64,000 nt of DNA from Callorhinchus milii. Taxonomy: Eukaryota. The notes under the pieces were generated by a model, which saw nothing but the letters and a program-made list of their open reading frames with translations, was not told where the DNA came from and made no database searches. The translations under genes were made by a program, and so were the position numbers. Location: positions 310,001 to 374,000 of the forward strand of contig NW_024704744.1 in the NCBI RefSeq assembly GCF_018977255.1, written 5' to 3'. Below, piece after piece: positions 17,174-49,862 of the stretch; within the stretch, counting starts at the first letter, position 1; the number at the start of each line of letters is the position of its first letter.

Positions 17174-17198
17174 NNNNNNNNNNNNNNNNNNNNNNNNN
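17174..17198. other. Assembly gap (25 N)
   Basis: Run of n. Confidence 1.
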
Positions 17199-31006: not shown

Positions 31007-31055
31007 ATGAACACGATTCTCTTTACTGTGAGGCTGCTCCTATGTGTTATGGCAG
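31007..31055 (+). CDS. Gene B exon 1: signal-peptide (leader) exon, MNTILFTVRLLLCVMA+G
   Basis: ATG at 31007; 16 mostly hydrophobic codons plus 1 nt, then donor ag|gtaagt. This is the phase-1 leader exon layout typical of Ig/TCR-like genes, and it splices in frame to 31952. Confidence 0.85.
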
Positions 31056-31951
31056 GTAAGTGAGGTGGGGAGGCAGGGAGAGGAGATGCTTTGTTGTGTG
31101 TGGGTGTTGGGAGTCTGTGTTATCTTGTATATGAGACGAGCTGAAAGATTTCAGGATGTCACTGAGTACTAATGACAATGCTCTCACCCTACTCCTCTAC
31201 TCGTTCACTTCGCTCAACGGGCTCCGGCCTCCTGCATATTCCCCGTCTCCTCTGCTCTAACATCGGCGGCCGTGCTTTCAGGCACGACACCCCAAGTCTC
31301 TGGAACTCACTGCCTCAATCATCTAACCGCTCCCTCCTTGTCCATCTTCAGATCATACCTGAAACGCTTCCTGTTTGACCCTGCCTACAGTCACTTCCGC
31401 GCTCTCTCCACTCACACCCTTGACACTCTACAGTAAAGCCAGGTCAGGCTGCTCACTGGGAGGAGATTGACCACCATGTTTGGGACCACCCTGTGTGAGC
31501 TACAGCCTACACAAGAACTAGACTGATGCTCAGAGTCAGTGTGTTGAGGAATTCCAGCCACTGATGTGGATGTGGTGTAATAGGAAGCAGTGTTTGGAGC
31601 ACAGCACAGATTGCTGGTGTGTGCTAAGAGGCTGTATACTGTGGATACAGGAGAGCCAGCCCTGACCAGCTGACACTGAGATTCAGTCCATATCAATGGC
31701 TATTTGTCACTGAATAAACAACTCTTGTTTATTTTTGAGCATGCCTTTTCCAATTGAAACTTGCATGCTTTAAATATTTTTACATACTCTCTACTCCTTA
31801 AAAATGTAAATAAATAACGTGGTCACTCAATCCACGATTGTTTCTGGAACAGCACTGTGGCTTTAATCATAGATAGGTGTTAAATCTGCTGCTCTGTATG
31901 TGTGTCTGACTCCTCGCCCTGTGACAGTTTGTACCTGTTCACTGTTTAAAG

Positions 31952-32293
31952 GGGGAACAGCAGATCCTGTCCTGACTCAGTCACCGGCCCAAGTAACTGT
32001 GAGAGTGGGGCAGACCGTCCACTTACTGTGTGCCATGAAGAACGGTGAAATGGAGAAAATACATCTACACTGGTACCAGCGGCGGCCTGGACAAGGAAAT
32101 CGACAAATTATAACTCATTATCAAAATCACGTTCAGAGGTACGATGTTACTGAACGTTTTGGGTCAAAGAAAAATCTCACTGACAACAGCTGTACTCTGA
32201 CGATCACTGATGTACGTCTCACAGACTCTTCTATCTATACCTGTGCTGTGTACTCAACTATCTTTGGAACTGGGACTGTGGTAACTGTGATCG
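31952..32293 (+). CDS. Gene B exon 2: germline-joined VJ-type Ig V-set domain V1
   Basis: Acceptor tttaaag| and donor g|gtaagt; 342 nt, phase 1-1. Translation shows VLTQSP, C(B strand), WYQRRPG, TLTI, DSSIYTC and FGTGTVVTVI within one exon. No RSS between V and J parts. Confidence 0.93.
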
Positions 32294-32789
32294 GTAAGTG
32301 AACCATCAAATCAATTGAGAGAGAGTGAGTGAGAGTCACACAGGGAGAGAATCATAGAATTATACAGCACAGAAGGAGGGTATTCGACTCATCGTGTCCG
32401 CCCCGGCTCTTTGAAAAGGGCTATGTAAATCAATCCCACTCCCCTGCTCTCCCCATAGCCCTGCAAACTTGACCTCCCAAATAATTATCTACTTCTGTCT
32501 TAAAAGTTGTTATCAAACCAGGAGTTGAGGGTGGGGGCAGAAAGATAGAGTTGGGTGTCATCTGCATACATATGGAGGTTGACCCCATGTCTGCGGATGA
32601 TATCACCAAGGGGGGAGCATGTAGATATTAAAGAGGAGACAGGGCCAGAGCCCTGGGGGACGCCAGACGTGACAGTGCAGGGACTGGAGGAGAAACTGAT
32701 AAAAGTGGAGGCGTGAGAGAGATAGGAATCGAACCAGACAAGGGCAGGTCCGCGAAGATTAGGTAAAGACAGGGACACAGGGACAGAGA

Positions 32790-35500
32790 GTGTCACACAG
32801 AGAGAGACAGAGAGAGAGAGAGAGTCACATGGAGCGAGATAGAGAAAGTCACACGGAGAGAAAGACAGAGTCACATAGGGAGAGAAAGTCTCACAGAGAG
32901 AGAGAGTGACACAGAGAAAGGGAGATTCACACAGAGAATCACAGAGGGAGAGTCAGAGAGAGAGAGAGAGAGAGAGAATCACACAGGAAGAGTGACAGAG
33001 AGAGAGAGAGTGACAGAGAGAGAGAGAGAAAGAGAGTCACATAGGGAGAGAAAGTCACATAGAGCGAGAGAGAGAGTCACAGAGAGTGTCACACAGAGAG
33101 AGAGTCACAGAGAGAGATAATCACAGGTGGAGTCACACAGAAAGAGAGTCACACAGGGAGAGAAAGAGTCACACAGGAAGAGAGAGTGTCACACGGAGAG
33201 AGAGTCTCACGGAGAGAAAGAGTCACACGGAGAGACAGAGTCACACTGGAAGAGAGAGAGTGTCACACGGAGAGGGAGAGTCACACACGGAGAGAGTCAG
33301 TGAGAGTCTCACAACGAAGGAGAAAGAGAATCACACGGAGAATGAGTGAGAGTCACTCAGGGAGTGAAAGAGGGAGAGAAAGAGTTACACAACGAGAGAG
33401 TGAGACAGAGAGAGAGAGAGAGAGTGAGTGAGAGTCACACAGGGAGAGAGAAAGAGAATCACCCAGGGAAGCGTGAAAGACAGAGAGAGTAAGACAGAGT
33501 CACACAGGAAGAGAGGGTGAGTGAGTTACAGAGAGAGAAAGAGAGTCACACAGGGAGTGCGAGAGAGTCATACGGAGAGAGAGAGTGTCGCACAGGGAAA
33601 GAGTGAGAGACAGAGAGAGAGAGATTCACACAGGGAAACAACAAAAACAAGGTTTCATTTATAGAGCGCCTTTCACATTGGGAGGACGTCCCAAGGCGCT
33701 GGACAGTTGTGTCGGGACCCGAGCATTGGGGGGAAATGGTCAGGGTGAGGGAAGGGAGGGAGCGAGGAGGGTGGAAATGGTCAGGTTGAGGGGAGGGAAG
33801 GGAGGGAGCGAGGAGGGGGTAGAGAGTCGAGAGCGGAGCTGAAGGCTGAAGGTCAAAGAGAAAGGTCTTGAGACCGGCCTTGAAGGAGGAAAGGGAGGAA
33901 GCGGCGAAGGCACTGGGGGATAGAGTTCCAAAGCCTCGGGGCTGAGAGGCTGAAGGCCACCGATGGTAGGGCGGTTGGGGCGGGGGACGTGGAGCAGACC
34001 GGAGCCGGAGGAACGGAGAATACGGGCAGGTAGTTAGGGGGATAGTAGGTCAGAGAGGTAGGAGGGAGCGAGGCCGTGAATGGCCTTGTAGGTGAGGATG
34101 AAGATCTTGAAATCGATCCTCTGGGGGATGCGGAGCAGTGGAGGCGAGTGAGGGCGAGGGTGAGGGCGAGGGCGAGGGTGAGGGTGGGAGTGATGTTGGC
34201 GCAGTGTCTGGTGCGGGACAGTACACGAGCTGCAGAGTTCTGAATGACCTGTAGTGTGGAGGGAGGTGGCGGGAAGGCCGCGAGGAGAGAGTTCCCATAG
34301 TCCAGCCTTGAGGTGATAAAGGTGTGGACCAGAGTTTCAGCCGCGTGAGGGGTGAGGTAGTGCCGTAGTCTGGCGATGTTCCGGAGGTGATGAAAGAGTG
34401 TGAGTGAGAGTCACACAAGAAGAGAGAAAGAGTATCACTCAGGAACAGAGTGAGAGACATAGAGAGAGTGAGAGAGATTCACACAGGGAGAGAGTGTGAG
34501 TGAGAGTCACACAATGAGAGAGAAAGAGAATCACACAGGGAGAATGAGTGAGAGTCACTCAGGGAGAGAATAAAGAAGAGAAAGAGTAATACAAGGAGAG
34601 AGTCTCTGGGGAGAGTCCCACAGAGAGAGAGAAAGAGAGTCACACAGGGAAAGAGTGAGACAAGGAGAGAGAGTGAGAGTCACACAAGGAGAAAGAGAAT
34701 CACCCAGGGAAGAGTGAAAGACATAGAGAGTGTAAGAGAGAGTCACACAGGAGGAGAGAGTGAGTGAGTTACAGAGAGAGAAAGAGAGTCAAACAGGGAG
34801 AGAGAGAGTCACACCGGGAGAGAGAGAATCACACAGGCAGAGAGTCACACAGGGAGAGAGAGAGAGTCACACAGGGAGCGAGAGAGAGAATCACTCAGGG
34901 ACAGAGTGAGACAGAGAGTGAGAGATTCACACAGGGAGAGTGAGTGAGTGAGATTCACTCAGGGAGTGAGAGTCACAAAGGGCGAGAGTGACAGTTACAC
35001 AGTGAGAGACTGTGAGAGTTACAGAGACAGAAAGAGTCACATAGGGGGAGAAAGAGTCACAAGGAGATAGAGAGAGTCACACAGGGAGAGAGAGAAAATC
35101 ACAGTGAGAGAGAGAGGGGGAGAGAGAGAGAGAGTCATTCAAGGAGAGCGAGAGAGAGATGGGGAGAGAGAGTCACACAAAGAGAGAGTCTCCAGAGAGT
35201 GAGTTGCTGGAGAGAGAGTCACACAAGGAAAGAATGAGAGTCACACAGAGAGAGAGCGAGAGAGAGCGAAAGACAGAGAGAGAGAGAGTGAGAGTCACAC
35301 AGGTAGAGAGCGAGAGAGAGAGAGCGAAAGACAGAGAGAGAGAGCGAGAGAGAGAGTGAGAGTCACACAGGGAGAGAGCGAGAGTCACATGGGGGCGGGG
35401 GGCGAATACCCCTATTTCTGTTTGAGAAACTGCAGGGGACCTGGCCCCGAGGGACATTAGGAGAGAGACTGAGAGATAGCAAGAGAGAGAGACAGAGACT
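32790..35500. repeat. GA-rich (gagagagtcacacagg)-type low-complexity array, unit 1
   Basis: Direct inspection; interrupted by an L2 fragment. Confidence 0.85.
33630..34395 (-). mobile_element. L2 3' fragment present only in duplication unit 1
   Basis: Reverse complement of the L2 3' end; absent from unit 2. Confidence 0.8.
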
Positions 35501-35697
35501 GAGAGAGAAATATATAAAAAGGAGCCCTCCCACAGGAGCCCTCCCATTGAGTATAATGTCAAAATGTGTAAATCTATAATGTCTGTCTGTGCGTCTGTCT
35601 GTCTGTTAATCTGCATTCCATATTGGATCATTTGGTCGCAAATGAAGCTGCTACAGGTACAGCTTGTAATTTAATATAATGTTAGTGACAATATTGT

Positions 35698-35913
35698 GGA
35701 GTGCTGTAGCTCAGTGGTTAGAGCACACGCCTTGCAAGTGAGACACGTGGGTTCAATTCCAGGCAGAGGGCGAAACCTTGGGCAAGTTTCCTTACTCCAC
35801 ACAGAGCCTAATAATAATCCGTCTAAAAAAAATAATAAATTGGTCATTTTCAACCCACGGCTGTTTGTGGGACATTGCTGTGCGCAATTGACTGCCGCGT
35901 TTCACAAATATAC
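35698..35913 (+). mobile_element. Same SINE family, truncated by the duplication breakpoint
   Basis: Head and body present, tail replaced by the start of unit 2. Confidence 0.85.
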
Positions 35914-36098
35914 GCTTTAAATATTTTTACATACTCTTTACTCCTTAAAAATGTAAATAAATAACGTGGTCACTCAATCCACGATTGTTTCTGGAACAGC
36001 ACTGTGGCTTTAATCATAGATAGGTGTTAAATCTGCTGCTCTGTATGTGTGTCTGACTCCTCGCCCTGTGACAGTTTGTACCTGTTCACTGTTTAAAG

Positions 36099-36440
36099 GG
36101 AGAACGGGAGTTCCTGTCCTGACTCAGTCACCGGCCCAAGTAACTGTGAGAGAGGGGCAGACCGTCCACTTACTGTGTGCCATGAAGAACGGTGAAATGG
36201 GGAAAATACATCTACACTGGTACCAGCGGCGGCCTGGACAAGGAAATCGACAAATTATAACTCATTATCAAAATCACGTTCAGAGGTACGATGTTACTGA
36301 ACGTTTTGGGTCAAAGAAAAATCTCACTGACAACAGCTGTACTCTGACGATCACTGATGTACGTCTCACAGACTCTTCTATCTATACCTGTGCTGTGCAC
36401 ACAACTATCTTTGGAACTGGGACTGTGGTAACTGTGATCG
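36099..36440 (+). CDS. Gene B exon 3: germline-joined VJ-type V domain V2 (recent duplicate of V1)
   Basis: Same splice sites and length (342 nt, phase 1-1) as V1; 8 nt differences from V1; open frame. Confidence 0.9.
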
Positions 36441-36965
36441 GTAAGTGAACCATCAAATCAATTGAGAGAGAGTGAGTGAGAGTCACACAGGGAGAGAATC
36501 ATAGAATTATACAGCACAGAAGGAGGGTATTCGACTCATCGTGTCCGCCCCGGCTCTTTGAAAAGGGCTATGTAAATCAATCCCACTCCCCTGCTCTCCC
36601 CATAGCCCTGCAAACTTGACCTCCCAAATAATTATCTACTTCTGTCTTAAAAGTTGTTATCAAACCAGGAGTTGAGGGTGGGGGCAGAAAGATAGAGTTG
36701 GGTGTCATCTGCATACATATGGAGGTTGACCCCATGTCTGCGGATGATATCACCAAGGGGGGAGCATGTAGATATTAAAGAGGAGACAGGGCCAGAGCCC
36801 TGGGGGACGCCAGACGTGACAGTGCAGGGACTGGAGGAGAAACTGATAGACATAAAAGTGGAGGCGTGAGAGAGATAGGAATCGAACCAGACAAGGGCAG
36901 GTCCGCGAAGATTAGGTAAAGACAGGGACACAGGGACAGAGAGTGTCACACAGAGAGAGACAGAG

Positions 36966-37165
36966 AAAAAAAAAACAATAATAAATTGGTCATTTTCAAT
37001 CCACGACTGTTTGTGGGACATTGCTGTGCGCAATTGGCTGCCGCGTTCGCCCACAAATATACAGTCAATTCACTTTACAGTGTGTTCTGTGAAGCGCTTT
37101 GGGACGTCCTCCCGACGAGAAAAGCGCTATATCAAATGCAAGGATTATTATTATTATTATTATTA
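36966..37165 (+). mobile_element. 5'-truncated SINE, unit 2 only
   Basis: Matches the 3' two-thirds of 26815-27143. Confidence 0.85.
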
Positions 37166-40100
37166 AAGTCACATAGAGAGAGAGAGTACACCGAGAGAGA
37201 GAGAGAGAGTCAGAGAGAGAAAGTGTCACACAGAAAGAGAGTCACAGAGAGAGAGAGAGAGAGAGAATCACAGAGACAGAGTCACACAGAAAGAGAGAAT
37301 CAAACAGAGAGTGTCACACAGGCAGAGAAAGAGTCACACAGGAAGAGACAGAGTAAGAGTCACACAGGAAGAGAGAGTGTCACACAGGAAGAGAGAGTGT
37401 CACACAGGGAGAGAGAGTGTCACACGGGGAGAGAGAGAGGGTCACACGGAGAGAGAGAGAGAGAGAGAGTCACACAGTGAGAGAGAGAGAGTCACACAGG
37501 GAGAAGGAGAGAGAGAATCACACAGGGAAAGAGAAAGTCACACGGAGAGAGAGAGACACACAGAGGAAGAGAAAGTCACACGGGGAGAGAGAGTCACATA
37601 AGTAGAGAGTCTTGAGAGAGTCACACAGGGAGAGAGAGAGAGTGAGTGAGAGTCACACAAGGAGAGAGAAAGAGAATCGCACAGGGAGAATGAGTTAGAG
37701 TCACTCAGGGAGAGAAAGAGGGAGAGAAAGAGTTACACAAGGAGAGAGTCTCTGGCGAGAGTCCGCAAGAGAGAGAGAAAGAGAGTCACACAGGGAAAGA
37801 GTGAGACAAGGAGAGAGAGAGAGAGAGAGAGTGAGAGTCACACAAGGAGAAAGAAAATCACCCAGGGAAGAGTGAAAGACACAGCGAGAGTAAGAAAGAG
37901 TCACACAGGAGGAGAGAGTGAGTGAATTACAGAGAGAGAAAGAGAGTCAGAGAGTCAAACAGGGAGTGAGTGAGAGTCACACAGGGAGAGAGAAAGAATC
38001 ACACAGGAAAGAGTGAAAGACAGAGAGAGAGATACACACGGGGAGAGAGAGAGTGAGCCGTAGTCACACAAAGAGAAAGAGAATCACACAGGGAAAGATT
38101 GACTGGGCTCAAAATTGATAAGTCCCCAGGACCAGATGGGTTTCACCCAAAGTTGCTGTGGGAGATATGGGTTCAAATAGCGGAGGCTTTGGCCATTATA
38201 TTTCAATCTTCATTGGACACGGAGTGGTGCAGAGAGACTGGGGAGTGGCTAATGTTACCCCACTCTACAAAAAGGGGCAGAAAGACAAACCCGGAAATTA
38301 CAGGCCAGTCAGCCTAACCTCGGTAATAGGAAAGCTACTGGAGACCGTAATCCGGGACAGAATAGATCTCTACTTAGAGGAACACGAGGTAATTAGAGAC
38401 CCCCAACATGGATTTGTTAAAGGCAAATCTTGCCGAACAAATCTAATAGAAAGTCTTGAAGAGGTGACTGTGAGGGTTGATGAGGGAAATGCGGTGGACG
38501 TTATTTACATGGATTTCAAAAAGGCTTTTGACACAGTTCCACATAAGAGATTAATAAAAAAATTAGAGGCTCACAGTATTAAGGGGACAGTGGCAGTTTG
38601 GATTAGGAACTGACTGAGTGACAGAAAGCAGAGGGTGGTGGTTAATGGGTGTTTCTCGCAATGGGAGGAGGTGTGCAGCGGTGTCCCCCAGGGATCGGTA
38701 TTGGGACCACTGCTCTTTCTAATATATATTAATGATCTGGAATGGGGCACAGGGAGCACTATTTCCAAGTTTGCAGATGATACCAAGTTCGGTCGGGTAG
38801 GAAATAGTGAGGAGGACTGTAACCAACTGCAGGCAGACACACACAGAATGGTGGAATGGGCTGACATGTGGCAGATGGATTTCAATGTGGATAAGTGTGA
38901 GGTGATACACTTAGGGAGGAAGAATGATAGGAGGCAATATAGACTTGGAGCTCAATCTTAAGGGGGTGAACGTACAGAGAGATCTGGGTGTTCAAGTAAG
39001 TGAATCATTAAAGGTAGTGGGGCAGGTAGATAGGGCAGTAAAAAGGGCATTTGGTGTCCTGAGCTTCATTAGTAGGGCATAGAGTATAAGAGTAGGGGTT
39101 ATGGTTAATCTGTACAGAACACTGGTTAGGCCTCAGCTGGAGTACTGCGTCCAGTTCTGGACACCGTACCTCAGGAAGGACATTAAGGCACTGGAAAGGG
39201 TACAGAGGAGATTCACGAGAATGATACCAGGAATGGGGAACCTTAGCTATGAGGACAGTGGAGAAGTTAGGACTTTTCCCATTAGAGCAGAGAAGGTTAC
39301 GTGGGGACCTGATAGAGGTCTTCAAGATCATGAAAGGTTTCGACAGGCGAGATAAGGACAAGCTGTTTCCGCTGGTCGGTGTGTCTGTGACCCGCGGTCA
39401 CAGTCTGAAGATATCACCAAAAGAAGCAGAGGGGAGGGTTAGAAGAAATGTTTTCACTCAGCGAGTTGTTGGAATTTGGAATGATCCGCCCGAAAGGGCA
39501 GTGAAGTCCGATTCGATAACAGCTTTTAAGAGAGAACTGGACAGGTATCGGGGAAGACGGGTTTGTGGGGTTATGGGGAGAAAGCTGGTGATTGGGGTCA
39601 GTGAAAGTGACGCTCTGTCAAAGAGCCGCACAGACTCGATGGGCCGAATGGCCTCCTTCTGTGCCGTAACATTCTATGAATCTATGAAAATGAAAGAGTG
39701 AGCGAGAGAGAGAGAGTCACACAGGGGGAGAGAAAGAATCACCCAGGGAGAGAGAGAGAGGGTCATGCAGGGAGAGAGAGAGTCACACAGGGAGAGAGAG
39801 AGTGTTACACAGGGAGAGAGAGATAGTCACACAGGAGAAGAGAGAGAGAGATACACAGGGAGAGAGGGAGAGTTGTAGGGAGAGAGAGTCACACAGTCAG
39901 AGAAAGAGACTCACACAGAGCGAGAGAGAGAGAGAGTCAGAGAGAGAGAGAGAGAGAGCGAGAGAAAGTCACACAGGGAGAAAAAGAGTCACACAAGGGG
40001 TGAGAGAGTCACACAGTGAGAGAGTGAGTGAAAGTCACACAGGGATAGAGAGAGTGATTGAAACAGATAGAGAGAGTCACATGGGGAGAACGAGCGAGAG

Positions 40101-40590: not shown

Positions 40591-40773
40591 TAAAAAGGAG
40601 CCCTCCCACAGGAGCCCTCCCACTGAGTATAATGTCAAAATGTGTAAATCTATAATGTCTGTCTGTGCGTCTGTCTGTCTGTTAATCTGCATTCCATATT
40701 GGATCATTTGGTCGCAAATGAAGCTGCTACAGGTACAGCTTGTAATTTAATATAATGTTAGTGACAATATTGT

Positions 40774-41094
40774 GGAGTGCTGTAGCTCAGTGGTTAGAGC
40801 ACACGCTTTGCAAGTGAGACACGTGGGTTCAATTCCAGGCAGAGGGCGAAACCTTGGGCAAGTTTCCTTACTCCACACAGAGCCTAATAATAATCCGTCT
40901 AAAAAAAAACAATAATAAATTGGTCATTTTCAATCCACGGCTGTTTGTGGGACATTGCTGTGCGCAATTGGCTGCCGCGTTCGCCCACAAATATACAGTC
41001 ACTTCACTTTACAGTCTATTCTGTGAAGCGCTTTGAGATGTCGAGAAGACGTGAAAAGCGCTATATCAAATGAAAGGATTATTATTATTATTAT
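40774..41094 (+). mobile_element. Full-length SINE at the end of unit 2
   Basis: Head, body and (ATT)n tail. Confidence 0.9.
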
Positions 41095-41139
41095 ATTTAG
41101 TTTAGTCACTTATTTGAATCAGTGACTAAACAAATTGTC

Positions 41140-42770
41140 TGTGATCAGTGTAGGAATGTTCAACCCCTCTATAATCACCACCATATCCTCCATGAAGCCC
41201 ACCACCTGTTCCCTGGATCCCAACCCCACCCCTCTCCTCAAATCTCAGCTCCAGCTCTTTGCCCCACTACTTGCCAATATCATCAACCTCTCCCTGTCAT
41301 CTGGCGCTGTTCCTTCCCTCCTCAAAACAGTCATTATCAACTCCACTTTGAAGAAATCTTCCCTCGATCCATCACAGCTATCCATCTACCGCCACATGCT
41401 CTGGTCAAAGTCACAAGCGACATACTGACCATGTGTGACCAGGGCTCCCTCTGCTTTCTCATCCTCCTCAACCTCTCCGCCACCTTTGACACCGTGGACC
41501 ACTCAATCCTCCTCCACCGCCTCTCCTTCCACCTCAACCTTCAAGGTTCTGTCCTTGACTGGTTCAGGTCCTCCCTATCACACCGACTCCACCTCGTCTC
41601 AGCAAACGGCTTCTCCTCCACCCCCCGCACTGTCTTGTGTGGTGTTCCTCAGGACTCTGTCCTGGGTCCCCTCCTCTTCACCCTCTACATGCTCCCCCTT
41701 GGTGACATCATCTGCAGACGTAGGGTAAATTTCCAAACGTATGCGGATGATACCCAACTCTATATTTCTGCCTCCACCCTCAATTCCAGGACTACTGGCG
41801 TCCTGGCCGATTGCCTGTCTGACATCAAGTCCTAGACGAGGGACTTTCTCCAGCTGAACTTTAGCAAGACCGAGGCCCTTCTGATTGGCTCGTGCCAGCG
41901 CCTCCGCACCTCGGGCACTCGCAGCATCAGCCTCCACGGTTGCACACTCAACCTCACTAAGCCAGTCAGGAACCTGGGAGTCTTGTTTGACCCTGAACTG
42001 TCCTTTCTCCCCCATGACCGGCGCTGCCTACCACCACCTCCGCAACATTGCCACTGCCTCACCCCTCAGGCTCCCCCTCACCCACACATTCGTCACCTCG
42101 AGGCTCGATTACGAAAACTCCCTCCTCATCGGCCTTCCCAACTCTTCCCTTCACAAGCTGCAGATCATCAAAACTCTGCAGCTCATGTACTCTCTCGCAC
42201 CAGGCTCTGTGACCCCATCACTCCCACCCTCGCCCGACCCCATCTCTCCCACCTTCGCCCAACCCCATCACTCCCACCCTCGCCCGACTCCACTGGCTCC
42301 CCATCCCACAGAGGATTGAGTTCAAGATCCTCATCCTCACTTTCAAGGCCATCCATGGACTTGCCCCCTCCTACCTCTCTGACCTGCTGACTCCCTACCA
42401 ACCTGCCCGCTCCCTCCATTCAGTGGGTTCCGGTCTGCTCCATGTCTCCCGCCCGACTCACCCTACCATCGGTGGCCAGGCTTTCAGCCTCTCTGCCCCC
42501 ACACTCTGGAACTCAATCCCACGGTCCCTTCACCTCGCTTCCTCCCTTGCCTCCTTCAATAATAATAAAAATAATAATAAATAATAATTCAAGGCCGGTC
42601 TCTAGACCCTCCTCTTCGACCGTGCCTTCGGTCACCCTCCCACCTCTTTGCCTTAGCTCAGCCCTACCCCACCCCTCCCCCATGCTCGGGTCCTGACCCC
42701 TGACTGTGCAAAGCCTTGGGACGTCCTCCCAACGTGAAAGGCGCACTATAAATGTAATTTTGTTGTTGAT
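41140..42770 (+). mobile_element. L2 RT 3' fragment ending about 50 nt upstream of the V3 acceptor
   Basis: NLSATFDTVDH, GVPQDSVLGP, YADDTQ and L2 tail. Confidence 0.85.
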
Positions 42771-42820
42771 GTTGTTCCCTCCAGGCTGGACTGTAACTGA
42801 CAGAGATTTTTCCCTTACAG

Positions 42821-43165
42821 GTACGACTGATCCTCTCCTCATTCAGTCCCCGACCCTGGAACGTGTCGCAGTGGGATACCCGGCCCGGTTACAGTGCTCC
42901 ATGGAGAACGCAGACGTGAGCCGCAACGATGTACACTGGTACCGACAACTCCCGGGACAGCAGAGGGAGTGGATTTTAACACATGATACAAATGGCAGGA
43001 AAACAGATCACGAAGATGTTAATCAGCGTCTCCAGCCGTCCAGAGTCACCTCCAATAACACCTACATTCTGATACTCAGACGAGTGACAGTCAGTGACGC
43101 TGCCGTCTATCACTGCTGTGTGTGGGGAGATGTCTGTGGGAACGGGACCCGACTGAACGTAACAT
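42821..43165 (+). CDS. Gene B exon 4: divergent germline-joined VJ-type V domain V3
   Basis: Acceptor tttttcccttacag| and donor t|gtgagt; 345 nt, phase 1-1. LIQSP..LQC..WYRQLPGQ..DAAVYHCCVWGDVCGNGTRLNVT. Confidence 0.93.
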
Positions 43166-43234
43166 GTGAGTAAACTTATACTGTGTCCAGATTTTACTGT
43201 CAGATTTCAGCTTCTCAAATGTCCTCAGGAGCTT

Positions 43235-43868
43235 TGTGTAGGTACACACACTAAACTCTCACTGTGTGTAGGTAAACACCCTAAACTCACACTGTGTGTA
43301 GGTACACACACTAAACTCTCACTGTGTGTAGGTACACACCCTAAACTCTCACTGTGTGTAGGTACACACCCTAAACTCTCACTGTGTGTAGGTACGCACC
43401 CTAAACTCTCACTGTGTGTAGGTACACACCCTAAACTCACACTGTGTGTAGGTACACACCCTAAACTCTCACTGTATGTAGGTACACACCCTAAACTCAC
43501 ACTGTGTGTAGGTACACACCCTAAACTCACACTGTGTGTAGGTACACACCCTAAACTCTCACTGTGTGTAGGTACACTCCCTAAACTCTCACTTTGTGTA
43601 GGTACACACCCTAAACTCTCACTGTGTGTAGGTACACACCCTAAACTCACACTGTGTGTAGGTACACACCCTAAACTCTCACTGTATGTAGGTACACACC
43701 CTAAACTCTCACTGTATGTAGGTACACACCCTAAACTCTCACTGTATGTAGGTACACACCCTAAACTCTCACTGTGTGTAGGTACATACACTAAACTCTC
43801 ACTGTATGTAGGTACACACCCTAAACTCTCACTGTATGTAGGTACACACCCTGAACTCACACCTAAAC
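43235..43868. repeat. 30-bp minisatellite (ctgtgtgtaggtacacaccctaaactctca)n, about 21 copies
   Basis: Direct inspection; each unit carries the inverted repeat gtgtgta-gg-tacacac. Confidence 0.93.
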
Positions 43869-43954
43869 ATTAACCTGGGAGTGAATGGAAGGTATTTACA
43901 ATGAGTCTGTTCATTGCACCAAAACATGGGAGAGATTCAGAGTAGTAATGTATT

Positions 43955-44910
43955 CATAGATTCATAGAATGTTACGGCACAGAAGGAGGCCATTCGGTCC
44001 ATCGAGTCTGTGAGGCTCTTTGACAGAGCGTCACTCTCACTGACCCCAATCACCAGCTTTCACCCCATAACCCCACAAACCCGTCTTCCCCGATACCTGT
44101 ACAGTTCTCTCTTAAAAGCTGTTATCGAATCGGACTTCACTGCCCTTTCGGGCGGATCATTCCAAATTCCAACAACTCGCTGAGTGAAAACATTTCTTCT
44201 AACCCTCCCCTCTGCTTCTTTTGGTGATATCTTCAGACTGTGACCGCGGGTCACAGACACACTGACCAGCGGATACAGGTTGTCCGTAACCTTCTCTGTA
44301 ACCTGCTCTAATGGGAAACGTCCTACCTTCTCCCGCCTGTCCTCGTAGATAAAGTTCCCCATTCCTGGTATCATTCTCGTGAATCTCCTCTGTACCCTTT
44401 CCAGTGCCTTAATGTCCTTCCTGAGGTACGGTGCCCAGAACTGGACGCAGTACTCCATCTGAGGCCTAACCAGTGTTTTGTACAGATTAACCATAACCCC
44501 TACTCTTATACTCTATGCCCTACTAATAAGGGGAGTCCTGTAGCTCAGTGGTTAGAGCACTCGCTTTGCAAGTGAGACACCTGAGTTCAATCCCCGGCAG
44601 GTCAGGGCCAAACCTTGGGCAAGTTTCCTTACTCCACACAGAGCCTAATAATAATCCCTCCAAAACCAAAAAAAAACAATAATAAATTGGTCATTTTCAA
44701 TCTACGACTGTTTGTGGGACATTGCTGTGCGCAATTGGCTGCCGCGTTCGCCCACAAACATACAGTCAATTCACTTTACAGTGTGTTCTGTGAAGCGCTT
44801 TGGGACGTCCTCTCGACGTGAAAAGCGCTATATCAAATGCAAGGATTATTATTATTATTAAAGCTCAGTACACCAAATGCCTTTTTTACTGCCCTATCTA
44901 CCTGCCCCAC
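43955..44910 (-). mobile_element. CR1 3' fragment interrupted by a SINE (44532-44860)
   Basis: Same subfamily translation (ORF 44060-44494); CR1 sequence resumes after the SINE tail. Confidence 0.85.
44532..44860 (+). mobile_element. Full-length SINE inserted into CR1
   Basis: Head, body and (ATT)n tail. Confidence 0.9.
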
Positions 44911-45967
44911 TATAGAGTTATCATCGTCTGGGAAATGTACACACCCTAAACTAAGCTGATCGTAACAATAACAAATTGCATTTACGTAGCACCTTCATGT
45001 CGGGAGGATATTCTAAGGCGATTCCAACTCCAATTGGAGTTGCGGCACAGATCAGCCATAATCTAATGTAACGGGGAACAGACTCGAGGGGCTGAATGCC
45101 ATACTCCTGTTCCTACTGTCATTTGTGTCAAAGGCACTCTGTAAATGTAAATTTATATTGTAATGTCTCTTGCATTGTGATTACATTTGTAAATGTCTGT
45201 TGTTTGAAGCTCTGATTCTCTCATTCTCTCCACATTGTCTGGACACAGGGAGCAGAGAACAGGTCTGGATCAACATGGGGACAGCTCTGGGAGTCCTGGC
45301 CTGTGTTGGAGCAGCTTTTCTTACCTACAAGATGTGTAGTTTGTGAAGAAACAGTCCTGTACATTTGCCTCCATGTTTTACCTGAACTAATCCACACTGA
45401 AGGCGACTTGTCAGACTTTGGGGAAATGAAGATGTGACAAATGTAAGGAGTCTTTTTCCCAAGTTCCACACAGGACCTCCACACGTCATCTGATCAGAGG
45501 CAGTGACACGAGGCACAAAGTCATGTTATCATCAGGGGAACGTGTCAATTTAGAGGAGATATTTTACAGACGGGGTTAGAGTGTGGAATGCCTCGCCCAC
45601 ATGGCTCTTCAAACCAGAATAGTGTTTACTGGGCATTAGATAAATACAGGAGGAATTATATGCAAGGATTTGAGAAGGTGGAGGTTAATGAAGAGCTGCA
45701 GTGGGGAGTGAGCACCAGCACAGACACGATGGGGAGCGATCAGGGTAAAGGGATTACAGAGTTCCAGTGGTGCCTTCTCTTGTGCTGGAAACCTAGTGTG
45801 AGTTGGTGACTGTGTAAAGACCTGGGAATAAAGAGATTAAAATCAGCCTCAGGTTCAGCTGCACCCGATCAGAAGCTGTGACTTCCCAATGTGCCCGGAG
45901 AGAGATTGTGACGAATATTCAGACACTTTCCATTCAAAGCCACTGCATTTTATTGTTAAGTTCACAG

Positions 45968-46038
45968 CCGTTTCTCAGACTCGGGACCGCAGCTCAGCTC
46001 CAGATGCCGTCAATGTCTCTGCTTCAGGGATCAGGCCG
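45968..46038 (+). CDS. Gene B stalk/hinge exon (SVSQTRDRSSAPDAVNVSASGIRP)
   Basis: Acceptor ttcacag| and donor ccg|gtgagt; continues the V3 frame; clear homolog of exon 5937-6009. As assembled it ends in phase 0. Confidence 0.75.
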
Positions 46039-46089
46039 GTGAGTGCACCTGGGGCTGGTTTTCAGTGTTTGTCACAACATCAGGGGGTC

Positions 46090-47520
46090 CCAACAACAAG
46101 ATTACATTTGTATAGCGCCTTTCACATCGGGAGGACGTCCCAAGGCGCTGGACAGAGTACAGCGTTTCAGACCTGAGCTGGGGTTGGGGGGGGTAAGGGA
46201 GGGGAGGGGAAGGGGTGTGGCCGATGGCACAGTCGAAGAGGAGGGTCTTGAGGCGGGACTTGAAGGAGGCTAAGGAGGGGCCCAGGCAGAGTGCCTGGGG
46301 GATGGAATTCCAGAGGTTGGGGGAAGAGTGGCTGAAGGCTCTCCCGCTAATGGTGGGGCAGGTGAGTCGGGGAACTTGGAGCAGCCAGAGCCGGCTTAGG
46401 GGAGGGAACGGGTGGGTTGTTAGGGGGTTAGGAGGTCGCAGAGGTAGGGTGGGGCGAAGCCATGGAGGCCTTTGGATGTGAGGACCAGGATCTTGAACTG
46501 GATCCTCTGAAGGATACGGAGCCAATGGAGTCGGGCGAGAGTGGGGTGATGGGATCACAGAGTTTGGTGCGGGAGAGGACACGGGCTGCAGAGTTCTGGA
46601 TTATCTTCAGCCTATGGAGGGAGGAGTTGGGAAAGCCGACAAGCAGGACGTTTCCATAGTCGAGCCTCGATGAGGGCAAATTTCCTACAGTTGACTGTAG
46701 GAACAAGACTGAGGCCTTCCTGATTGGCTCGCGCCAGCGCCTCCGCACCTCAGGCTCTGGCAGCATCAACCTCCATGGTGTACACTACAACTCACCGTCA
46801 GTCAGGAACCAAGGTGTCTTGTTCGACCCTCAACTGTCTTCTTCCCCACATCCAAGCCATGACCCGCTCTGCCTTCCCTCACCTCTGTAACATCGCCCAA
46901 CTCCGTCACTACCTCACCCCTCAGGCGCTGAAACTCTGGTTCATGCCTTCATCACCTCCAGGCTCGACTATGCAAACGCCTTCCCAACTCCTCCCGACAC
47001 AGACTGCAGATAATCCAGAACTCTGCAGCCCGTGTCCTCTCCCGCACCAAACTCCGTGGCCCCATCTCCCCCACTCTCGCCCGACTCCATTGGCTCCCTA
47101 TCCTTCAGAGGATCCAGTTCAAGATCCTGGTCCTCACATCCAAAGCCCTCCATGGTCTCGCTCCACCCTACTTCTGTGACCTCTTAACCTCCTACCAACC
47201 TGCTCATTCCCTCTGCTCAGCGGGCTCTGGCTGCTCCACATCCCCCGACCCACCCGCCCCACTATTGGCAGGAGAGCCTTCAGCCACTCTCCCCCAACTT
47301 CTGGAATTACATTCCCCAATCATTCTGCTTCACCCCCTCTTTAGCCCCTTCAAGTCCCACCTCAAAACCCTCTTCGACCATGCCATAGGTCACCCTCCCT
47401 TCCCCTCCCCTCCCTTCCTCCCCCCCCCTGACCCCAGCTCAGGTCTGAAATGCTGTTTTCAGTGCTTTGGATAGTCGTCCTGACGTGAAAAGCGCTATAC
47501 AAATGTAATCTTCTTGTTGT
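46090..47520. mobile_element. Two L2 3' fragments (minus ~46090-46670, plus ~46700-47520)
   Basis: L2 3' coding motifs and tails. Confidence 0.75.
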
Positions 47521-48387
47521 TGTCCATGCTGTTTGTGCAGCTCTACTGTTAGCAAAGCAGCTGCTCCTTAGCCACACAGTCACTACATTGGTAGCACAGT
47601 GTAGAGGGAGCGTCACTGTTAGAGTTGCCAACTCTGGTTGAACATATTCCGGAAGGTTTCAGCAGATGACATAATGCCGTTAAGGACTGAGTTACTGCAG
47701 AACAAATTCACGCCACAATCATCCATTTTGAAAAATGCTTCAGTTCCTTTTAAAGGTGTAAAACACGGGGGATGAAGCTGCGGGTGGGGGGGGGGGGAGG
47801 AAAGATGACCAATAGTGCGATCAATGAGCTACATGTTGAGAAATGCTGTGAACGAGGAGAGGGATGGGGTGAGTTGGAGGGACACTGGCTGGAGTTCCTG
47901 AGAGTGGGGGCAGGATGGTTGAAAGCTCGATGGCTGATGGTGGGGGGAGCCCGGGACATGAAGTAGGCTGCTGCTCACCGAGCGGAGAGTGCGGGCAGAT
48001 CGATAGGGCTAAAGGAGGTCACAGAGGTCAGGTGGGGCAAGACCGTAGAGGGATGTAAAGGTGAGAACAAGGATCTGGAACTGGATCCACTGGGGTTGAG
48101 GAGCCAGTGGAGCCGGGTGAGGACAGGGGTGATAGGCTCACGGAGCCTGGTGCAGGAGACTTCAGCCAGTGGGAGATTTGGGACTGTCCTTGTGTAGTTG
48201 GGCTCTGTTATGTCGTGAAGCCTCCCAATGTTCTTGCTCACTCCGAGGCTTCTAGTATCACTTCAAAGGCCTCTGCTTTCACCTAATTGCTCACCTTCCC
48301 TTTGTGGTTACCTTGACAGCATCCAGACTGAGAGCTGAGTGGCTTGTGGCTTTAGCCCCAGATTCATGACGGCCTCAGCTTCAGAAG

Positions 48388-48454
48388 GTCTATCGTTGTA
48401 TTTGCTGTAGTGACTGTGCCGTGTCCTGCCATCGATACTTATACTTGTGGATAG
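48388..48454 (+). CDS. Gene B terminal exon coding part: hydrophobic tail SIVVFAVVTVPCPAIDTYTCG* (needs phase-2 entry)
   Basis: Homologous to 12061-12136, with TAG at the same aligned position; followed by an AT-rich 3'UTR and AATAAA at 48736. Out of frame with the stalk exon as assembled. Confidence 0.6.
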
Positions 48455-48735
48455 CGAGTGGTTCACCTCCTGCACCTTCACGTCGGTGACTATTTGAGTT
48501 TGTTAACATAGGCGGTTGCAAGTGACAATAGATATTTGCGATTAAAGTTTCTGTTCCGTGTATTTACAATTATTTTCATTGATTTATTTTTTTAATAGTC
48601 ATAGTAATCTTCTTGTTGTTAATTCCAATTCCTAAACCGTTTATTTACGAGTATTTTTGTGACCTTATTTACAAACATTTCCTGAACTTATTGACAAAAA
48701 CAGTCCCGTTACAGTCTGCTGTCCACATCAGTGGT

Positions 48736-48741
48736 AATAAA
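48736..48741 (+). terminator. Candidate polyadenylation signal of gene B
   Basis: AATAAA about 280 nt after the stop, preceded by an AT-rich tract with several ATTTA motifs. Confidence 0.5.
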
Positions 48742-49862
48742 CAATGTCTTAAAAAAAGGCAAAATTCTGCGGATGCCGGAAATCTGGTATAAACACAGAA
48801 GTCATTGGGAACGCAGCAGGTCAGGCAGCATCCATGGAGAGAGGAAATGAGTTAACGCTTCAAGTCTATGACCTTTCATCAGAACAGGCTCTATGTCGAT
48901 ATCGACAGTAAGCTCTTAGTATTAATGTGCGCAGAAGGACGAGGACTTGACTTGTTTGACAGTGGAAGTGGGATGTTGACATAAACAGGTTCGAGAGAAG
49001 TGGCTCGGACTGTATCATGTGGAGCGTCACTCCCCTCTCCTGGCGGGAATGTCACTGCAGCAGCTGAATCCCAACCTCAGCACAATCCGTCACTGACCAC
49101 AATCAATGTAATATCGACAGGGAATAAAGTACCAAACAGTCAAAACAAATCAACAGAGAGACAGCGATTTACCAGCAAAATCACTGGATAATGTCACTGA
49201 ATCTAACACCAACTCAGTCCAACATGTGGAGCGGTGCAGCAGCTGAACACGCAGCGGGAAAGCTTCCCGGGCAGGGATTCAATGACAAGCTGTGCTGTTT
49301 TAGATGGTTAAACTCCAGCAGTTACCCCAATGCACTCTCTGTGGTCGCCAAGTCTTGGCTCTTACCAACCTGTGCCTCATACTCTCCGGCATTAGGTCAG
49401 CACAATGCGTCCCTCCAGGGAGGGAGTGCACGTTCCATTCCAATACGTGGGAATATCATTGTGCCGATGAAATACGTGGAATTCTCGGTTTGGTTTGGAT
49501 ACTCTCAGCACGGGGCTGCTTTTCCACATCTGTCAGACACCTGGCTGACCAAAAAAACCTCTTCCTCCCAGTCCAACCCCACCCCCCCCCTTCCTCCCCA
49601 ATCAAAGCCCAGTCTTCCCTCCAGTAAACCAACAACAACAAATTACACTTGTATAGTGCCTTTCATGTCGGGAGGACGTCCCAAGGCAATGGACAGTCAG
49701 GGATTTGGACAAACCACTCTCATCACTCCCAGTGTAAACCAACTCTCTACAAACTCCATCTCCACTCATACCCTCCAGCTGATCTAGTTCCACATCAGGA
49801 GGACATCTCAAAGGCTATTTAATATATTTGTAGGATATTGACCGTCTGCCGAGTGGGGAGTG

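What the first reader, a model, noticed from the sequence alone, without database searches (positions are those of the whole stretch)
31007..48760. Non-rearranging receptor made of three tandem germline-joined VJ domains, with no C domain
Seen: L-V1-V2-V3-stalk splice in frame through canonical AG/GT sites. Each V exon has the Ig/TCR V signature plus a J-like G strand (FGTG, FGTG, CGNG) in one exon, a short CDR3-like loop (AVYSTI, AVHTTI, CVWGDV), no RSS, and I found no C1 exon. Established: germline VJ exons occur in NKp30, CD8, NITR/XMIV/PRARP-type genes and the TCR-mu supporting V, and are viewed as candidates for the pre-RAG antigen receptor ancestor. Inference: a V-V-V-stalk-anchor architecture (about 404 aa if the anchor frame is used) differs from Ig L and TCR chains and from single-V NKp30. 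It may be a little-described chondrichthyan innate receptor or ligand family.
Basis: partly seen in the sequence, partly recalled or inferred. Interest (0 to 1): 0.9.

Follow-up and report, generated by a model that had tools for sequence, protein, structure and literature searches.

The report
Elephant-shark receptor of three tandem V domains
This is a real, intact elephant-shark gene for a cell-surface protein made of three antibody-like variable domains in a row and no constant domain; it belongs to a family found in all cartilaginous fishes that databases list only as 'uncharacterized'.

Summary
All are phase 1-1, with canonical splice sites, a fused J-like G strand, no RSS and no C exon anywhere in the window.

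The 'stalk' (45968-46038) and the 'anchor' (~48.6 kb) have no support. The real last exon is 45249-46346's first 98 bases, 45249-45346, encoding stalk, transmembrane helix, a 5-residue tail and the stop.

The corrected 391-aa product is identical to RefSeq XP_042188803.1, 'uncharacterized protein LOC103172099' of Callorhinchus milii.

It belongs to a family present in sharks, rays and chimaeras: leader, 2-5 abutting single-exon VJ domains, a transmembrane segment, then either ITIM/ITSM tails or short tails.

The family lies outside the NKp30/NCR3 clade (support 97/94). In white shark and sawfish it sits on a different chromosome from the MHC-linked NCR3 cluster. Its V domains score closer to Ig/TCR V domains than to NKp30.

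V1 and V2 are a recent 1,053-bp exon duplication. It has 8 exon substitutions (7 nonsynonymous) against 1 in the introns (p = 8e-4).

I found no paper describing the family, but two key papers were not readable. Function is inferred only.

The parts
31007..31055 (+). Leader exon (start codon; signal peptide MNTILFTVRLLLCVMA-G; phase-1 donor GTAAGT)
   Evidence: It is the only such exon in the window. It is the first exon of the model that equals XP_042188803.1.
31952..32293 (+). V1 exon: complete V-set domain with fused J-like G strand (…YTCAVYSTIFGTGTVVTVI), phase 1-1
   Evidence: (V-set E 1.2e-17). It is 38-41% identical to family domains of sharks and rays.
36099..36440 (+). V2 exon: near-copy of V1 (…CAVHTTIFGTGTVVTVI), phase 1-1
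   Evidence: E 6.1e-18. It differs from V1 by 8 substitutions, 7 of them nonsynonymous.
31767..32813 (+). First copy of the 1,053-bp tandem duplication that carries the V1 exon and its flanking intron
   Evidence: 98.6% identity to 35914-36966; position of the differences.
35914..36966 (+). Second copy of the duplication, carrying the V2 exon; it does not include a leader exon
42821..43165 (+). V3 exon: 'type B' family domain (…YHCCVWGDVCGNGTRLNVT) with two extra cysteines flanking the CDR3-like loop; phase 1-1
   Evidence: E 1.5e-12. It is 60% identical to the elasmobranch type-B domain and 91% to paralogue P0008. AlphaFold2 pLDDT is 91.4. The best Foldseek matches are VH/VHH at TM 0.88.
45249..45346 (+). 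Last coding exon: stalk (W)SREQ, transmembrane segment VWINMGTALGVLACVGAAFLTY, tail KMCSL, stop TGA
   Evidence: tblastn hit of P0008 residues 203-235, 94% identical; sequence read; in-frame model; exact RefSeq match. The region is 97% identical over 565 bp to paralogue locus L001.
45347..45860 (+). Probable 3' UTR with AATAAA at 45827 and ATTAAA at 45836 (inferred)
   Evidence: Homology to the paralogue's 3' region runs to about 45745.

Best explanation
The region is one intact protein-coding gene of Callorhinchus milii, LOC103172099. It sits at MU249834.1:341,007-355,346, about 0.34 Mb from the end of a 99-Mb scaffold.

Its five coding exons encode a 391-aa type I membrane glycoprotein. In order: a signal peptide; three V-set domains, each from a single phase 1-1 exon that already contains the J-like G strand, so no V(D)J recombination is needed or possible; a few stalk residues; an uncharged transmembrane helix; and a 5-residue cytoplasmic tail.

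It is the holocephalan member of a chondrichthyan-wide multigene family of 'tandem-VJ' receptors. Members have 2-5 abutting V domains and no C domain. The shark and ray members mostly carry cytoplasmic ITIM/ITSM motifs.

Inferred mechanism. The V domains act as autonomous ligand-binding modules strung end to end. Linkers are about 4 residues, and the positions that pair VH with VL are polar here. Family members with long tails would deliver inhibitory signals through SHP-type phosphatases. This short-tailed copy would be a non-signalling or partner-dependent counterpart, in the way SIRP-gamma relates to SIRP-alpha.

The family diversifies by duplicating symmetric V exons and then changing their loop residues, as V1 and V2 show.

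Shown: the gene model, the family, the architecture, exclusion from the NCR3 clade, and the excess of exon change. Inferred: expression, ligand binding, signalling and immune function.
For: Gene model:
- Exon sequence, reading phases and splice sites were read directly.
- The 391-aa product is identical to XP_042188803.1, and the CDS span of 14,340 bp is the same.
- Pfam finds three V-set stretches in that product (E 1.8e-46).

Family:
- 72 chondrichthyan proteins match, with E down to 1e-158.
- Domain parsing gives 2-5 V domains, then a transmembrane segment and a tail, with no room for a C domain.
- Each V domain is one exon in white shark, sawfish, zebra shark and the C. milii paralogue.
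- Tails carry TVYA(S/T)V, LYYADI and TIYAAV motifs, or SIYSEL.
- V3 is 60% identical to the elasmobranch 'type B' domain.

The window holds no C exon, no extra V exon and no second leader, and no RSS next to the exons.

Diversification:
- 8 of the 9 substitutions in the 1,053-bp duplicate fall in the 342-nt exon. Seven are nonsynonymous, including CDR1- and CDR3-like positions (binomial p = 8e-4).
- dN/dS is about 0.8-2.3 among C. milii V exons.

Fold and pairing surface:
- V3 is predicted with pLDDT 91.4 and best matches VH/nanobody structures.
- In the HMMER alignment to a nanobody, V3 has Y, Q and R at the positions of VH residues 37, 44 and 45.
Against: - No transcript data were available here. 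RefSeq models can rest on homology alone, so expression and the inclusion of both V1 and V2 in one mRNA are unproven.
- dN/dS near 1 for the V3-type exons would also fit relaxed constraint.
- This copy has no signalling motif and no charged transmembrane residue, so its output is unknown.
- The tree does not resolve whether V1/V2 belong in one clade with the other family domains. Family monophyly appears in 10% of bootstrap trees, although it is not rejected (AU p = 0.36).
- The V1/V2 duplication could in principle be an assembly artefact.
Confidence: 0.78

Rival explanations
1. It is a member of the NKp30/NCR3 family, the known MHC-linked non-rearranging VJ receptor, in a multi-V form.
For: - The G-strand motif GNGTRLNVT of V3 resembles the GNGTRLVV of human NKp30.
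- True shark NCR3-family proteins are also predicted with 2-5 tandem V domains.
- A tree that forces the family and NCR3 to be sisters is not rejected (AU p = 0.20).
Against: - A human NKp30 V-domain search of 1.84 billion representative proteins returned 252 hits. The best 150 include shark NCR3 proteins but no member of this family.
- The family's V profile scores antibody VL and a turtle V domain (RefSeq name 'TCR beta chain-like') at about 50 bits, against 14-31 bits for most NCR3 domains.
- Shark and bony-vertebrate NCR3 domains form a clade that excludes the family (97/94; 96% of bootstrap trees).
- White shark NCR3 genes lie on chromosome 19 next to AIF1, PRRC2A and DDAH2, and sawfish NCR3 genes on NC_067438.1 (PMC10751288 supplement). 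The family members are on other, much larger chromosomes.
- The transmembrane segment has no charged residue.
Confidence: 0.07
2. The V exons are germline-joined Ig light-chain or TCR V(J) genes or pseudogenes of the shark 'cluster' type, and do not belong to one receptor gene.
For: - Cartilaginous fishes are known to have germline-joined Ig genes (established knowledge).
- The best solved-structure matches of V1 are lambda light chains, about 48 bits per domain.
- V1/V2 are unresolved relative to VL/VH in the tree.
Against: - There is only one leader exon for the three V exons.
- Every V exon ends in a phase-1 splice donor rather than an RSS or a J-C intron leading to a C exon.
- No C1-like ORF exists in 64 kb.
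- A transmembrane exon follows V3 by 2.1 kb.
- The joined product equals a RefSeq model.
- V1 is closer to family domains (38-41% identity, ~90 bits) than to any antibody.
Confidence: 0.03
3. The gene is real, but the mature protein usually has fewer than three V domains. Either V2 (or V1) is a rarely used or mutually exclusive cassette exon, or the V1/V2 duplication is an assembly artefact.
For: - The two copies are 98.6% identical over 1,053 bp.
- All V exons are phase 1-1, so skipping any of them keeps the reading frame.
- Relatives in other species are annotated with isoforms of 1 to 4 V domains from one gene.
Against: - The differences between the copies are concentrated in the exon and are nearly all amino-acid changing. 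That is not the pattern of a collapsed or duplicated haplotype.
- The sequences between and beyond the copies differ.
- The paralogue locus L001 has an analogous tandem pair of V3-type exons.
- Only the three-V isoform, and none of six shorter ones, is on record in the protein collection.
Confidence: 0.15
4. The locus is a decaying or unexpressed gene copy in a repeat-rich, chromosome-end region.
For: - The window is dominated by LINE reverse-transcriptase fragments and satellite arrays.
- dN/dS is about 1 for V3-type exons among paralogues.
- The tail lacks the signalling motifs of the shark and ray relatives.
Against: - All five exons are open, with intact canonical splice sites, a start codon, a stop codon and poly(A) signals.
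- The V1/V2 exons have changed faster than their introns, which neutral decay does not predict.
- The paralogue keeps the same short-tail exon at 97% identity.
Confidence: 0.08

Closest known systems
NKp30 / NCR3 family (including the shark MHC-linked NCR3 genes and the frog NCR3-named proteins recovered here)
   Same: Both are non-rearranging receptors whose V domain is encoded with its J-like G strand in one exon. V3 shares the GNGT(R/Q)L motif. Both are type I membrane proteins. Non-mammalian NCR3 relatives are also predicted with tandem V domains and ITIM-type tails.
   Different: - The NCR3 clade excludes the family (97/94).
- There is no reciprocal retrieval between the two.
- The C-C' region is Ig/TCR-like here (WYRQ.PG), whereas NCR3 has W(Y/F)(K/R)...G.EVSN.
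- The chromosome differs from the MHC/NCR3 cluster in white shark and sawfish.
- There is no charged transmembrane residue.
V domains of rearranging Ig and TCR chains, and single-domain VHH
   Same: These are the best sequence and fold matches. V1 scores about 48 bits per domain against a lambda VL, and V3 scores 36 bits against VHH. Foldseek TM is 0.88 at 28-33% identity. The family profile scores VL and a turtle V domain (RefSeq name 'TCR beta chain-like') at about 50 bits. The framework motifs and the G.GT.L.V J motif are conserved.
   Different: There is no RSS and no separate J segment, so no somatic rearrangement. There is no C domain. Several V domains sit in tandem on one chain. The protein is membrane-anchored directly after the last V domain.
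SIRP family (SIRP-alpha / SIRP-gamma)
   Same: NCBI's pipeline names several relatives 'SIRP-alpha-like'. Both have a VJ-like N-terminal V domain. The shark members have ITIM-rich tails with YADI and EYA.V motifs. A short-tailed form with an uncharged transmembrane segment sits alongside long-tailed inhibitory forms, as SIRP-gamma does next to SIRP-alpha (my own knowledge).
   Different: SIRPs are V-C1-C1, whereas this family has no C1 domains.
NITRs (novel immune-type receptors) of bony fishes
   Same: By function and architecture they are the nearest analogue: a multigene family of non-rearranging receptors with a V domain carrying a J-like motif, in inhibitory (ITIM) and other forms (established knowledge; PMC6795676 read).
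   Different: NITRs have one V domain, sometimes followed by an I-type domain, rather than tandem V arrays. I know of no report of them in cartilaginous fishes (my own knowledge); the 2019 review read names none for them. Sequence relationship was not tested here, because no NITR sequence could be fetched.
UrIg / UrIg2 (non-rearranging shark VJ-C genes; Flajnik et al. 2023, 2025)
   Same: They are non-rearranging VJ exons in cartilaginous fishes that are closer to Ig/TCR V than NCR3 is (PMC12227049).
   Different: UrIg and UrIg2 have V-C1-C2-C3 structures and lie in the MHC or the IgH/TCR-alpha-delta complex (white shark chromosomes 19 and 27). This family has no C domains and sits on a 239.8-Mb white shark chromosome.

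Membership tests
Chondrichthyan tandem-VJ receptor family (unnamed; RefSeq 'uncharacterized protein' models such as LOC103172099) | Significant full-length sequence similarity to the other members | tested here: met
   72 chondrichthyan hits with E from 1e-158 to 1e-29. The product is an exact match to XP_042188803.1. V3 is 60% identical to the elasmobranch type-B domain and V1/V2 are 38-41% identical to family domains.
Chondrichthyan tandem-VJ receptor family (unnamed; RefSeq 'uncharacterized protein' models such as LOC103172099) | Each V domain, J-like G strand included, is encoded by one phase 1-1 exon | tested here: met
   Shown for the window. The same one-exon-per-V layout holds in white shark, sawfish, zebra shark and the C. 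milii paralogue.
Chondrichthyan tandem-VJ receptor family (unnamed; RefSeq 'uncharacterized protein' models such as LOC103172099) | Two or more abutting V domains followed directly by stalk and transmembrane segment, with no C domain | tested here: met
   The window contains no C1-like ORF.
Chondrichthyan tandem-VJ receptor family (unnamed; RefSeq 'uncharacterized protein' models such as LOC103172099) | Cytoplasmic ITIM/ITSM motifs (present in most but not all members) | tested here: not met
   The tail here is KMCSL. Short-tailed members also exist among elasmobranchs (P0033, P0036, P0072), so this feature varies within the family.
Chondrichthyan tandem-VJ receptor family (unnamed; RefSeq 'uncharacterized protein' models such as LOC103172099) | All V domains form one clade apart from other V families | tested here: inconclusive
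   Monophyly appears in 10% of bootstrap trees but is not rejected (AU p = 0.36). V3 groups with type B; V1/V2 are unresolved.
NKp30 / NCR3 | V domain falls in the NCR3 clade and is retrieved reciprocally with NKp30 | tested here: not met
   The NCR3 clade (97/94) excludes it. No family member is among the best 150 hits of human NKp30.
NKp30 / NCR3 | Linkage to MHC class III genes (AIF1, PRRC2A, DDAH2) | tested here: inconclusive
   Not met for the white shark and sawfish relatives, which lie on different chromosomes. For C. milii itself, I could not establish whether scaffold MU249834.1 corresponds to any of the scaffolds listed in that paper.
NKp30 / NCR3 | Charged transmembrane residue for pairing with CD3-zeta or FcR-gamma (mammalian NKp30) | tested here: not met
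   The transmembrane segment VWINMGTALGVLACVGAAFLTY has no charged residue.
NKp30 / NCR3 | Binds B7H6 | not testable with these tools
   Needs a binding experiment.
Germline-joined Ig light chain / TCR cluster | Own leader exon for each V, and a C1 exon downstream | tested here: not met
   One leader serves three V exons. No C1-like ORF is present in the window. The V exons end in splice donors that join them to each other in frame.
SIRP family | V-C1-C1 ectodomain | tested here: not met
   Neither the window protein nor its relatives have C1 domains.
NITR family | Sequence membership in the NITR V clade | not tested

The most novel reading that the evidence does not exclude
This family is the closest surviving non-rearranging relative of Ig/TCR V domains, closer than NKp30. 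It would be either a relic of the un-split V(J) exon lineage that the RAG transposon invaded, or a germline-rejoined antigen-receptor V that was turned into an innate receptor. In either case its tandem, autonomous V domains would work as a natural multivalent 'string of nanobodies' that diversifies by exon duplication and loop substitution rather than by recombination.
Probability: 0.2. Interest if true: 0.8.

Novelty: new variant of a known kind. Interest (0 to 1): 0.55.

Why it matters
Non-rearranging VJ-type V exons are the main material for reconstructing what antigen receptors looked like before the RAG transposon split a V exon. So far the discussion rests on NKp30/NCR3, PRARP and UrIg/UrIg2.

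This is a second VJ family present throughout the cartilaginous fishes. Its V domains score closer to Ig/TCR V than NKp30 does. It lies outside the MHC, and in white shark apparently outside the IgH/TCR complex as well. It is built only of V domains, with inhibitory tails in sharks and rays.

If it is expressed on lymphoid or NK-like cells, it would give cartilaginous fishes a counterpart of NITR, KIR or SIRP-type paired receptors, which have not been described for them. It would also offer a natural example of multivalent single-domain binding modules.

The V1/V2 pair shows the family's mode of diversification caught at an early stage.

Tried and rejected
1. Neither matches any family protein. 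The upstream flank of the 'stalk' looks like a repeat that also occurs at about 4355 (not followed up). Both were replaced by the exon at 45249-45346.

2. My first placement of that exon's acceptor, at 45243, gave a frame error. I corrected it to 45249.

3. NKp30 membership was tested and rejected. The exhaustive representative search supplied those sequences instead.

4. Kinlein et al. 2021 (PMC8273117) and Flajnik et al. 2012 (PMC3709836) are not held. I therefore could not check whether any of the eight nurse shark 'NCR3 family' subtypes is in fact this family.

5. Supplementary coordinates for the IgH/TCR complex in PMC12227049 are not held.

Only the V3 exon was modelled.

7. Look-ups of two zebra shark isoforms found nothing on record.

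8. P0078 from a Logan run turned out to be a genomic contig, not a transcript, so it gives no expression evidence.

9. An RSS scan found only weak heptamer/nonamer-like matches inside the 30-bp minisatellite and none at exon ends.

10. A search for tail exons like those of the shark members found none in the window at E < 1e-3.
Full report
**What is in the sequence.**

The region was read directly and translated.
- A 49-nt leader exon runs from 31007 to 31055. It starts with ATG, encodes MNTILFTVRLLLCVMA-G and has a GTAAGT donor.
- Three V exons follow at 31952-32293, 36099-36440 and 42821-43165.
- All three V exons are phase 1-1 and are bounded by AG and GT.
- Each is a Pfam V-set domain (E 1.2e-17, 6.1e-18, 1.5e-12).
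- Each ends with a J-like G strand inside the same exon: FGTGTVVTVI, FGTGTVVTVI and CGNGTRLNVT.

A tblastn of family proteins against the window gave no match at the proposed 'stalk' (45968-46038) or 'anchor' (~48.6 kb). It did give a 94%-identical match of the C-terminus of a C. milii paralogue (P0008) at 45245-45343.

Reading that stretch shows an exon at 45249-45346 with a good polypyrimidine tract and AG acceptor. Joined in phase to V3, it encodes:
- stalk WSREQ;
- transmembrane segment VWINMGTALGVLACVGAAFLTY;
- tail KMCSL, then a stop.

AATAAA and ATTAAA signals lie about 480 nt downstream.

The corrected product is 391 aa. An exact-sequence look-up found this protein as RefSeq XP_042188803.1, 'uncharacterized protein LOC103172099 [Callorhinchus milii]'. 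It is encoded at MU249834.1:341,007-355,346 of a 99.09-Mb scaffold. None of six shorter exon-skipping isoforms is on record. The window is therefore elephant-shark DNA, and the gene is annotated but unnamed.

**Negative checks.**
- The leader exon is unique in the window.
- A family V profile found only the three V exons among all 951 stop-to-stop ORFs of at least 40 aa. Antibody CL/CH1 and the C regions of two turtle Ig/TCR-like chains found nothing better than E 0.8. No C1 hallmark pattern is present.
- No RSS-like heptamer/nonamer abuts a V exon.

One leader, three V exons and one transmembrane exon, all on one strand and in one phase, make a single gene the simplest reading.

**The family.**

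A search with the joined protein returned 72 chondrichthyan proteins (E 1e-158 to 1e-29). After them come only antibodies and two turtle Ig/TCR-like chains, at E no better than 4e-11. The species cover galeomorph and squalomorph sharks, skates, rays, sawfish and the chimaera.

Parsing their domains gives one architecture: leader, 2-5 V domains separated by about 4 residues, a short stalk, a transmembrane segment and a tail.

The tails fall into a few classes:
- KKWACFQ…NTVYATV…ELYYADIQF…(T)IYAAV, which are ITSM and ITIM consensus matches;
- …ADYENI…ATYMAL…SIYSEL, which contains an ITIM;
- a related …NPVYATV…NYAEL…EYAVV class;
- short tails.

In white shark, sawfish, zebra shark and the C. milii paralogue, each V domain is again one exon. 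Elasmobranch domains fall into three types:
- type A, N-terminal;
- type B, with …KVWGDISGNGT…;
- type C, with …SVWSYIYGAGT….

The window's V3 is a type-B domain, 60% identical across the roughly 400-Myr holocephalan-elasmobranch split. V1 and V2 are 38-41% identical to family domains.

**V1 and V2 are a recent duplicate pair.**

V1 and V2 lie in a 1,053-bp tandem duplication of 98.6% identity that excludes the leader.
- Eight of the nine substitutions fall in the 342-nt exon, and one in the 711 nt of intron, which also carries a 6-bp indel.
- Seven of the eight exon changes alter the protein. They affect the first residues of the domain, one A'-B position, one CDR1-like position, and two adjacent CDR3-like residues (YS to HT).
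- The concentration of changes in the exon has binomial p = 8e-4.
- Nei-Gojobori dN/dS is about 2.3 for V1/V2 and 0.8-1.6 for V3 against the two V3-type exons of the paralogue locus. Counts are small.

The paralogue locus (WEZY01002071.1, L001) has its own tandem pair of V3-type exons and the same short-tail exon at 97% identity. Exon duplication followed by loop change is how this family grows.

**Is it NKp30?**

The GNGTRL motif suggested it, so I tested it. My typed human NKp30 sequence matched PDB 3PV6 exactly over residues 19-135.

An exhaustive HMMER search with the human NKp30 V domain against 1.84 billion representative proteins found only 252 hits.
- The best 150 include proteins from Mobula, Heterodontus, Pristiophorus and Scyliorhinus that are the real shark NCR3 relatives. 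Some of these have 2, 3 or 5 tandem V domains. Frog, bichir and turtle proteins also appear.
- None of the 150 is a member of the window's family; the best identity to it is 25-34%.

A profile of the family's V domains gave these scores:
- antibody VL, 49.6 bits;
- a turtle V domain (RefSeq name 'TCR beta chain-like'), about 50 bits;
- VH, 38-41 bits;
- most NCR3 domains, 14-31 bits.

In a careful maximum-likelihood tree of 95 V domains, NCR3 of sharks and bony vertebrates forms one clade (97/94; 96% of bootstrap trees) that excludes the family. Deeper relations are unresolved:
- family monophyly is not rejected (AU p = 0.36);
- a family + NCR3 sister grouping is also not rejected (AU p = 0.20).

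**Chromosomal location.**

The supplement of Verissimo et al. 2023 (PMC10751288) places the white shark NCR3 genes on chromosome 19 (NC_054485.1, 101.9-102.3 Mb), beside AIF1, PRRC2A and DDAH2. It places the sawfish NCR3 genes on NC_067438.1.

The family members map elsewhere:

| Species | Record (length) | Position |
|---|---|---|
| White shark | CM029966.1 (239.8 Mb) | 237.06 Mb |
| Sawfish | CM019857.1 (144.7 Mb) | 142.8 Mb |
| Zebra shark | CM060517.1 (99.3 Mb) | 96.4 Mb |
| Elephant shark | MU249834.1 (99.09 Mb) | 0.34 Mb |

Every position is within 3 Mb of a chromosome or scaffold end.

The white shark chromosomes that hold the MHC, its paralogous regions and the IgH/TCR complex are 8, 16, 19, 27, 30 and 40. 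A 239.8-Mb chromosome is most likely none of these. That last step rests on chromosomes being numbered by size, so it is an inference.

**Fold.**

AlphaFold2 on the V3 exon, with 19 family domains as alignment, gave pLDDT 91.4. Foldseek against the PDB returned VH and nanobody domains first, at TM 0.88 and 28-33% identity.

In the HMMER alignment to a nanobody, V3 carries Y, Q and R where VH has V37, G44 and L45. These are the positions that camelid VHH domains make polar when they lose the light-chain partner. V1 likewise has R, N and Q at the positions of VL Q38, P44 and L46.

With 4-residue linkers between domains, this points to unpaired V domains in a row. That is an inference and was not tested.

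**How it most likely works.**

Shown: an intact gene for a secreted-pathway, membrane-anchored chain of three V domains.

Inferred:
- The V domains bind ligand through their CDR-like loops.
- Relatives with ITIM/ITSM tails recruit SH2 phosphatases and inhibit the cell that carries them.
- This copy has a 5-residue tail and no charged transmembrane residue. It is a non-signalling or partner-dependent counterpart, as SIRP-gamma is to SIRP-alpha.

Expression, cell type and ligand are unknown.

**Novelty.**

I found no paper describing this family in seven full-text searches. The two papers most likely to mention it could not be read.

The gene model itself is public. The kind of gene, a non-rearranging VJ receptor, is known, and tandem-V forms also occur in NCR3 relatives. 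What is new is this:
- a separate VJ family across the cartilaginous fishes;
- V domains that score closer to Ig/TCR V than to NKp30;
- an all-V architecture;
- a location apart from the MHC-linked NCR3 cluster in white shark and sawfish.

I rate it a new variant of a known kind, of moderate to good interest.

Noticed in passing
window 43235-43862: A 30-bp minisatellite (about 21 copies, 94% matches; unit TGTGTAGGTACACACCCTAAACTCTCACTG) starts 70 bp after the V3 exon. It is conserved at the same place in the paralogue locus L001 (13593-14065). Most units contain the heptamer CACTGTG, in some followed by a weak nonamer-like stretch.
   Followed up: partly
window 17201-22071, 61322-63997 and 6111-6734: Large satellite arrays with a 14/27/41-bp unit (GAGCCCTCCCACAG and variants) and a 23-bp array. 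They produce long spurious ORFs on both strands. A 25-base N run lies at 17174-17198 next to one array and was left untouched.
   Followed up: no
window 9816-11165; 38158-38961; 22596-23596 (minus strand); 43953-44288: LINE reverse-transcriptase fragments (Pfam RVT_1, E 4.5e-31, 2.7e-17, 3.6e-10). One sits inside the V2-V3 intron. It has a 97%-identical inverted copy at 22.6-23.6 kb and another piece in the V3-TM intron.
   Followed up: partly
window 43105-43135 (V3 exon) and the C. milii paralogues: Holocephalan type-B domains have two extra cysteines (YHC-C-VWGDV-C-GNG) on either side of the CDR3-like loop, which shark and ray type-B domains lack. A loop-closing disulfide is possible.
   Followed up: no
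window 32185-32190 and 36332-36337 (V1 and V2 exons): V1 and V2 each carry a third cysteine in the E strand (DNSCTLTI), with no obvious partner within the domain.
   Followed up: no
proteins P0209, P0210, P0225, P0232 (Mobula, Heterodontus, Pristiophorus, Scyliorhinus): The true shark relatives of NKp30 are themselves predicted with 2, 3 or 5 tandem V domains. Frog, bichir and turtle relatives show the same. Tandem-V arrays therefore appear to be a recurrent theme among non-mammalian VJ receptors.
   Followed up: partly
loci L002, L003, L005 and L006: Family genes lie within about 0.3-3 Mb of a chromosome or scaffold end in white shark, sawfish, zebra shark and elephant shark, which hints at a conserved chromosome-end cluster.
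   Followed up: partly
window 42024-42101 and the Ensembl-derived fragments P0079 and P0361: UniProt/Ensembl entries annotate single V exons of this locus, or of a near-identical copy, as separate small proteins. In one case the V exon is joined to a spurious exon inside a repeat. P0361 differs from V1 at three residues and could be an allele or a further copy.
   Followed up: partly
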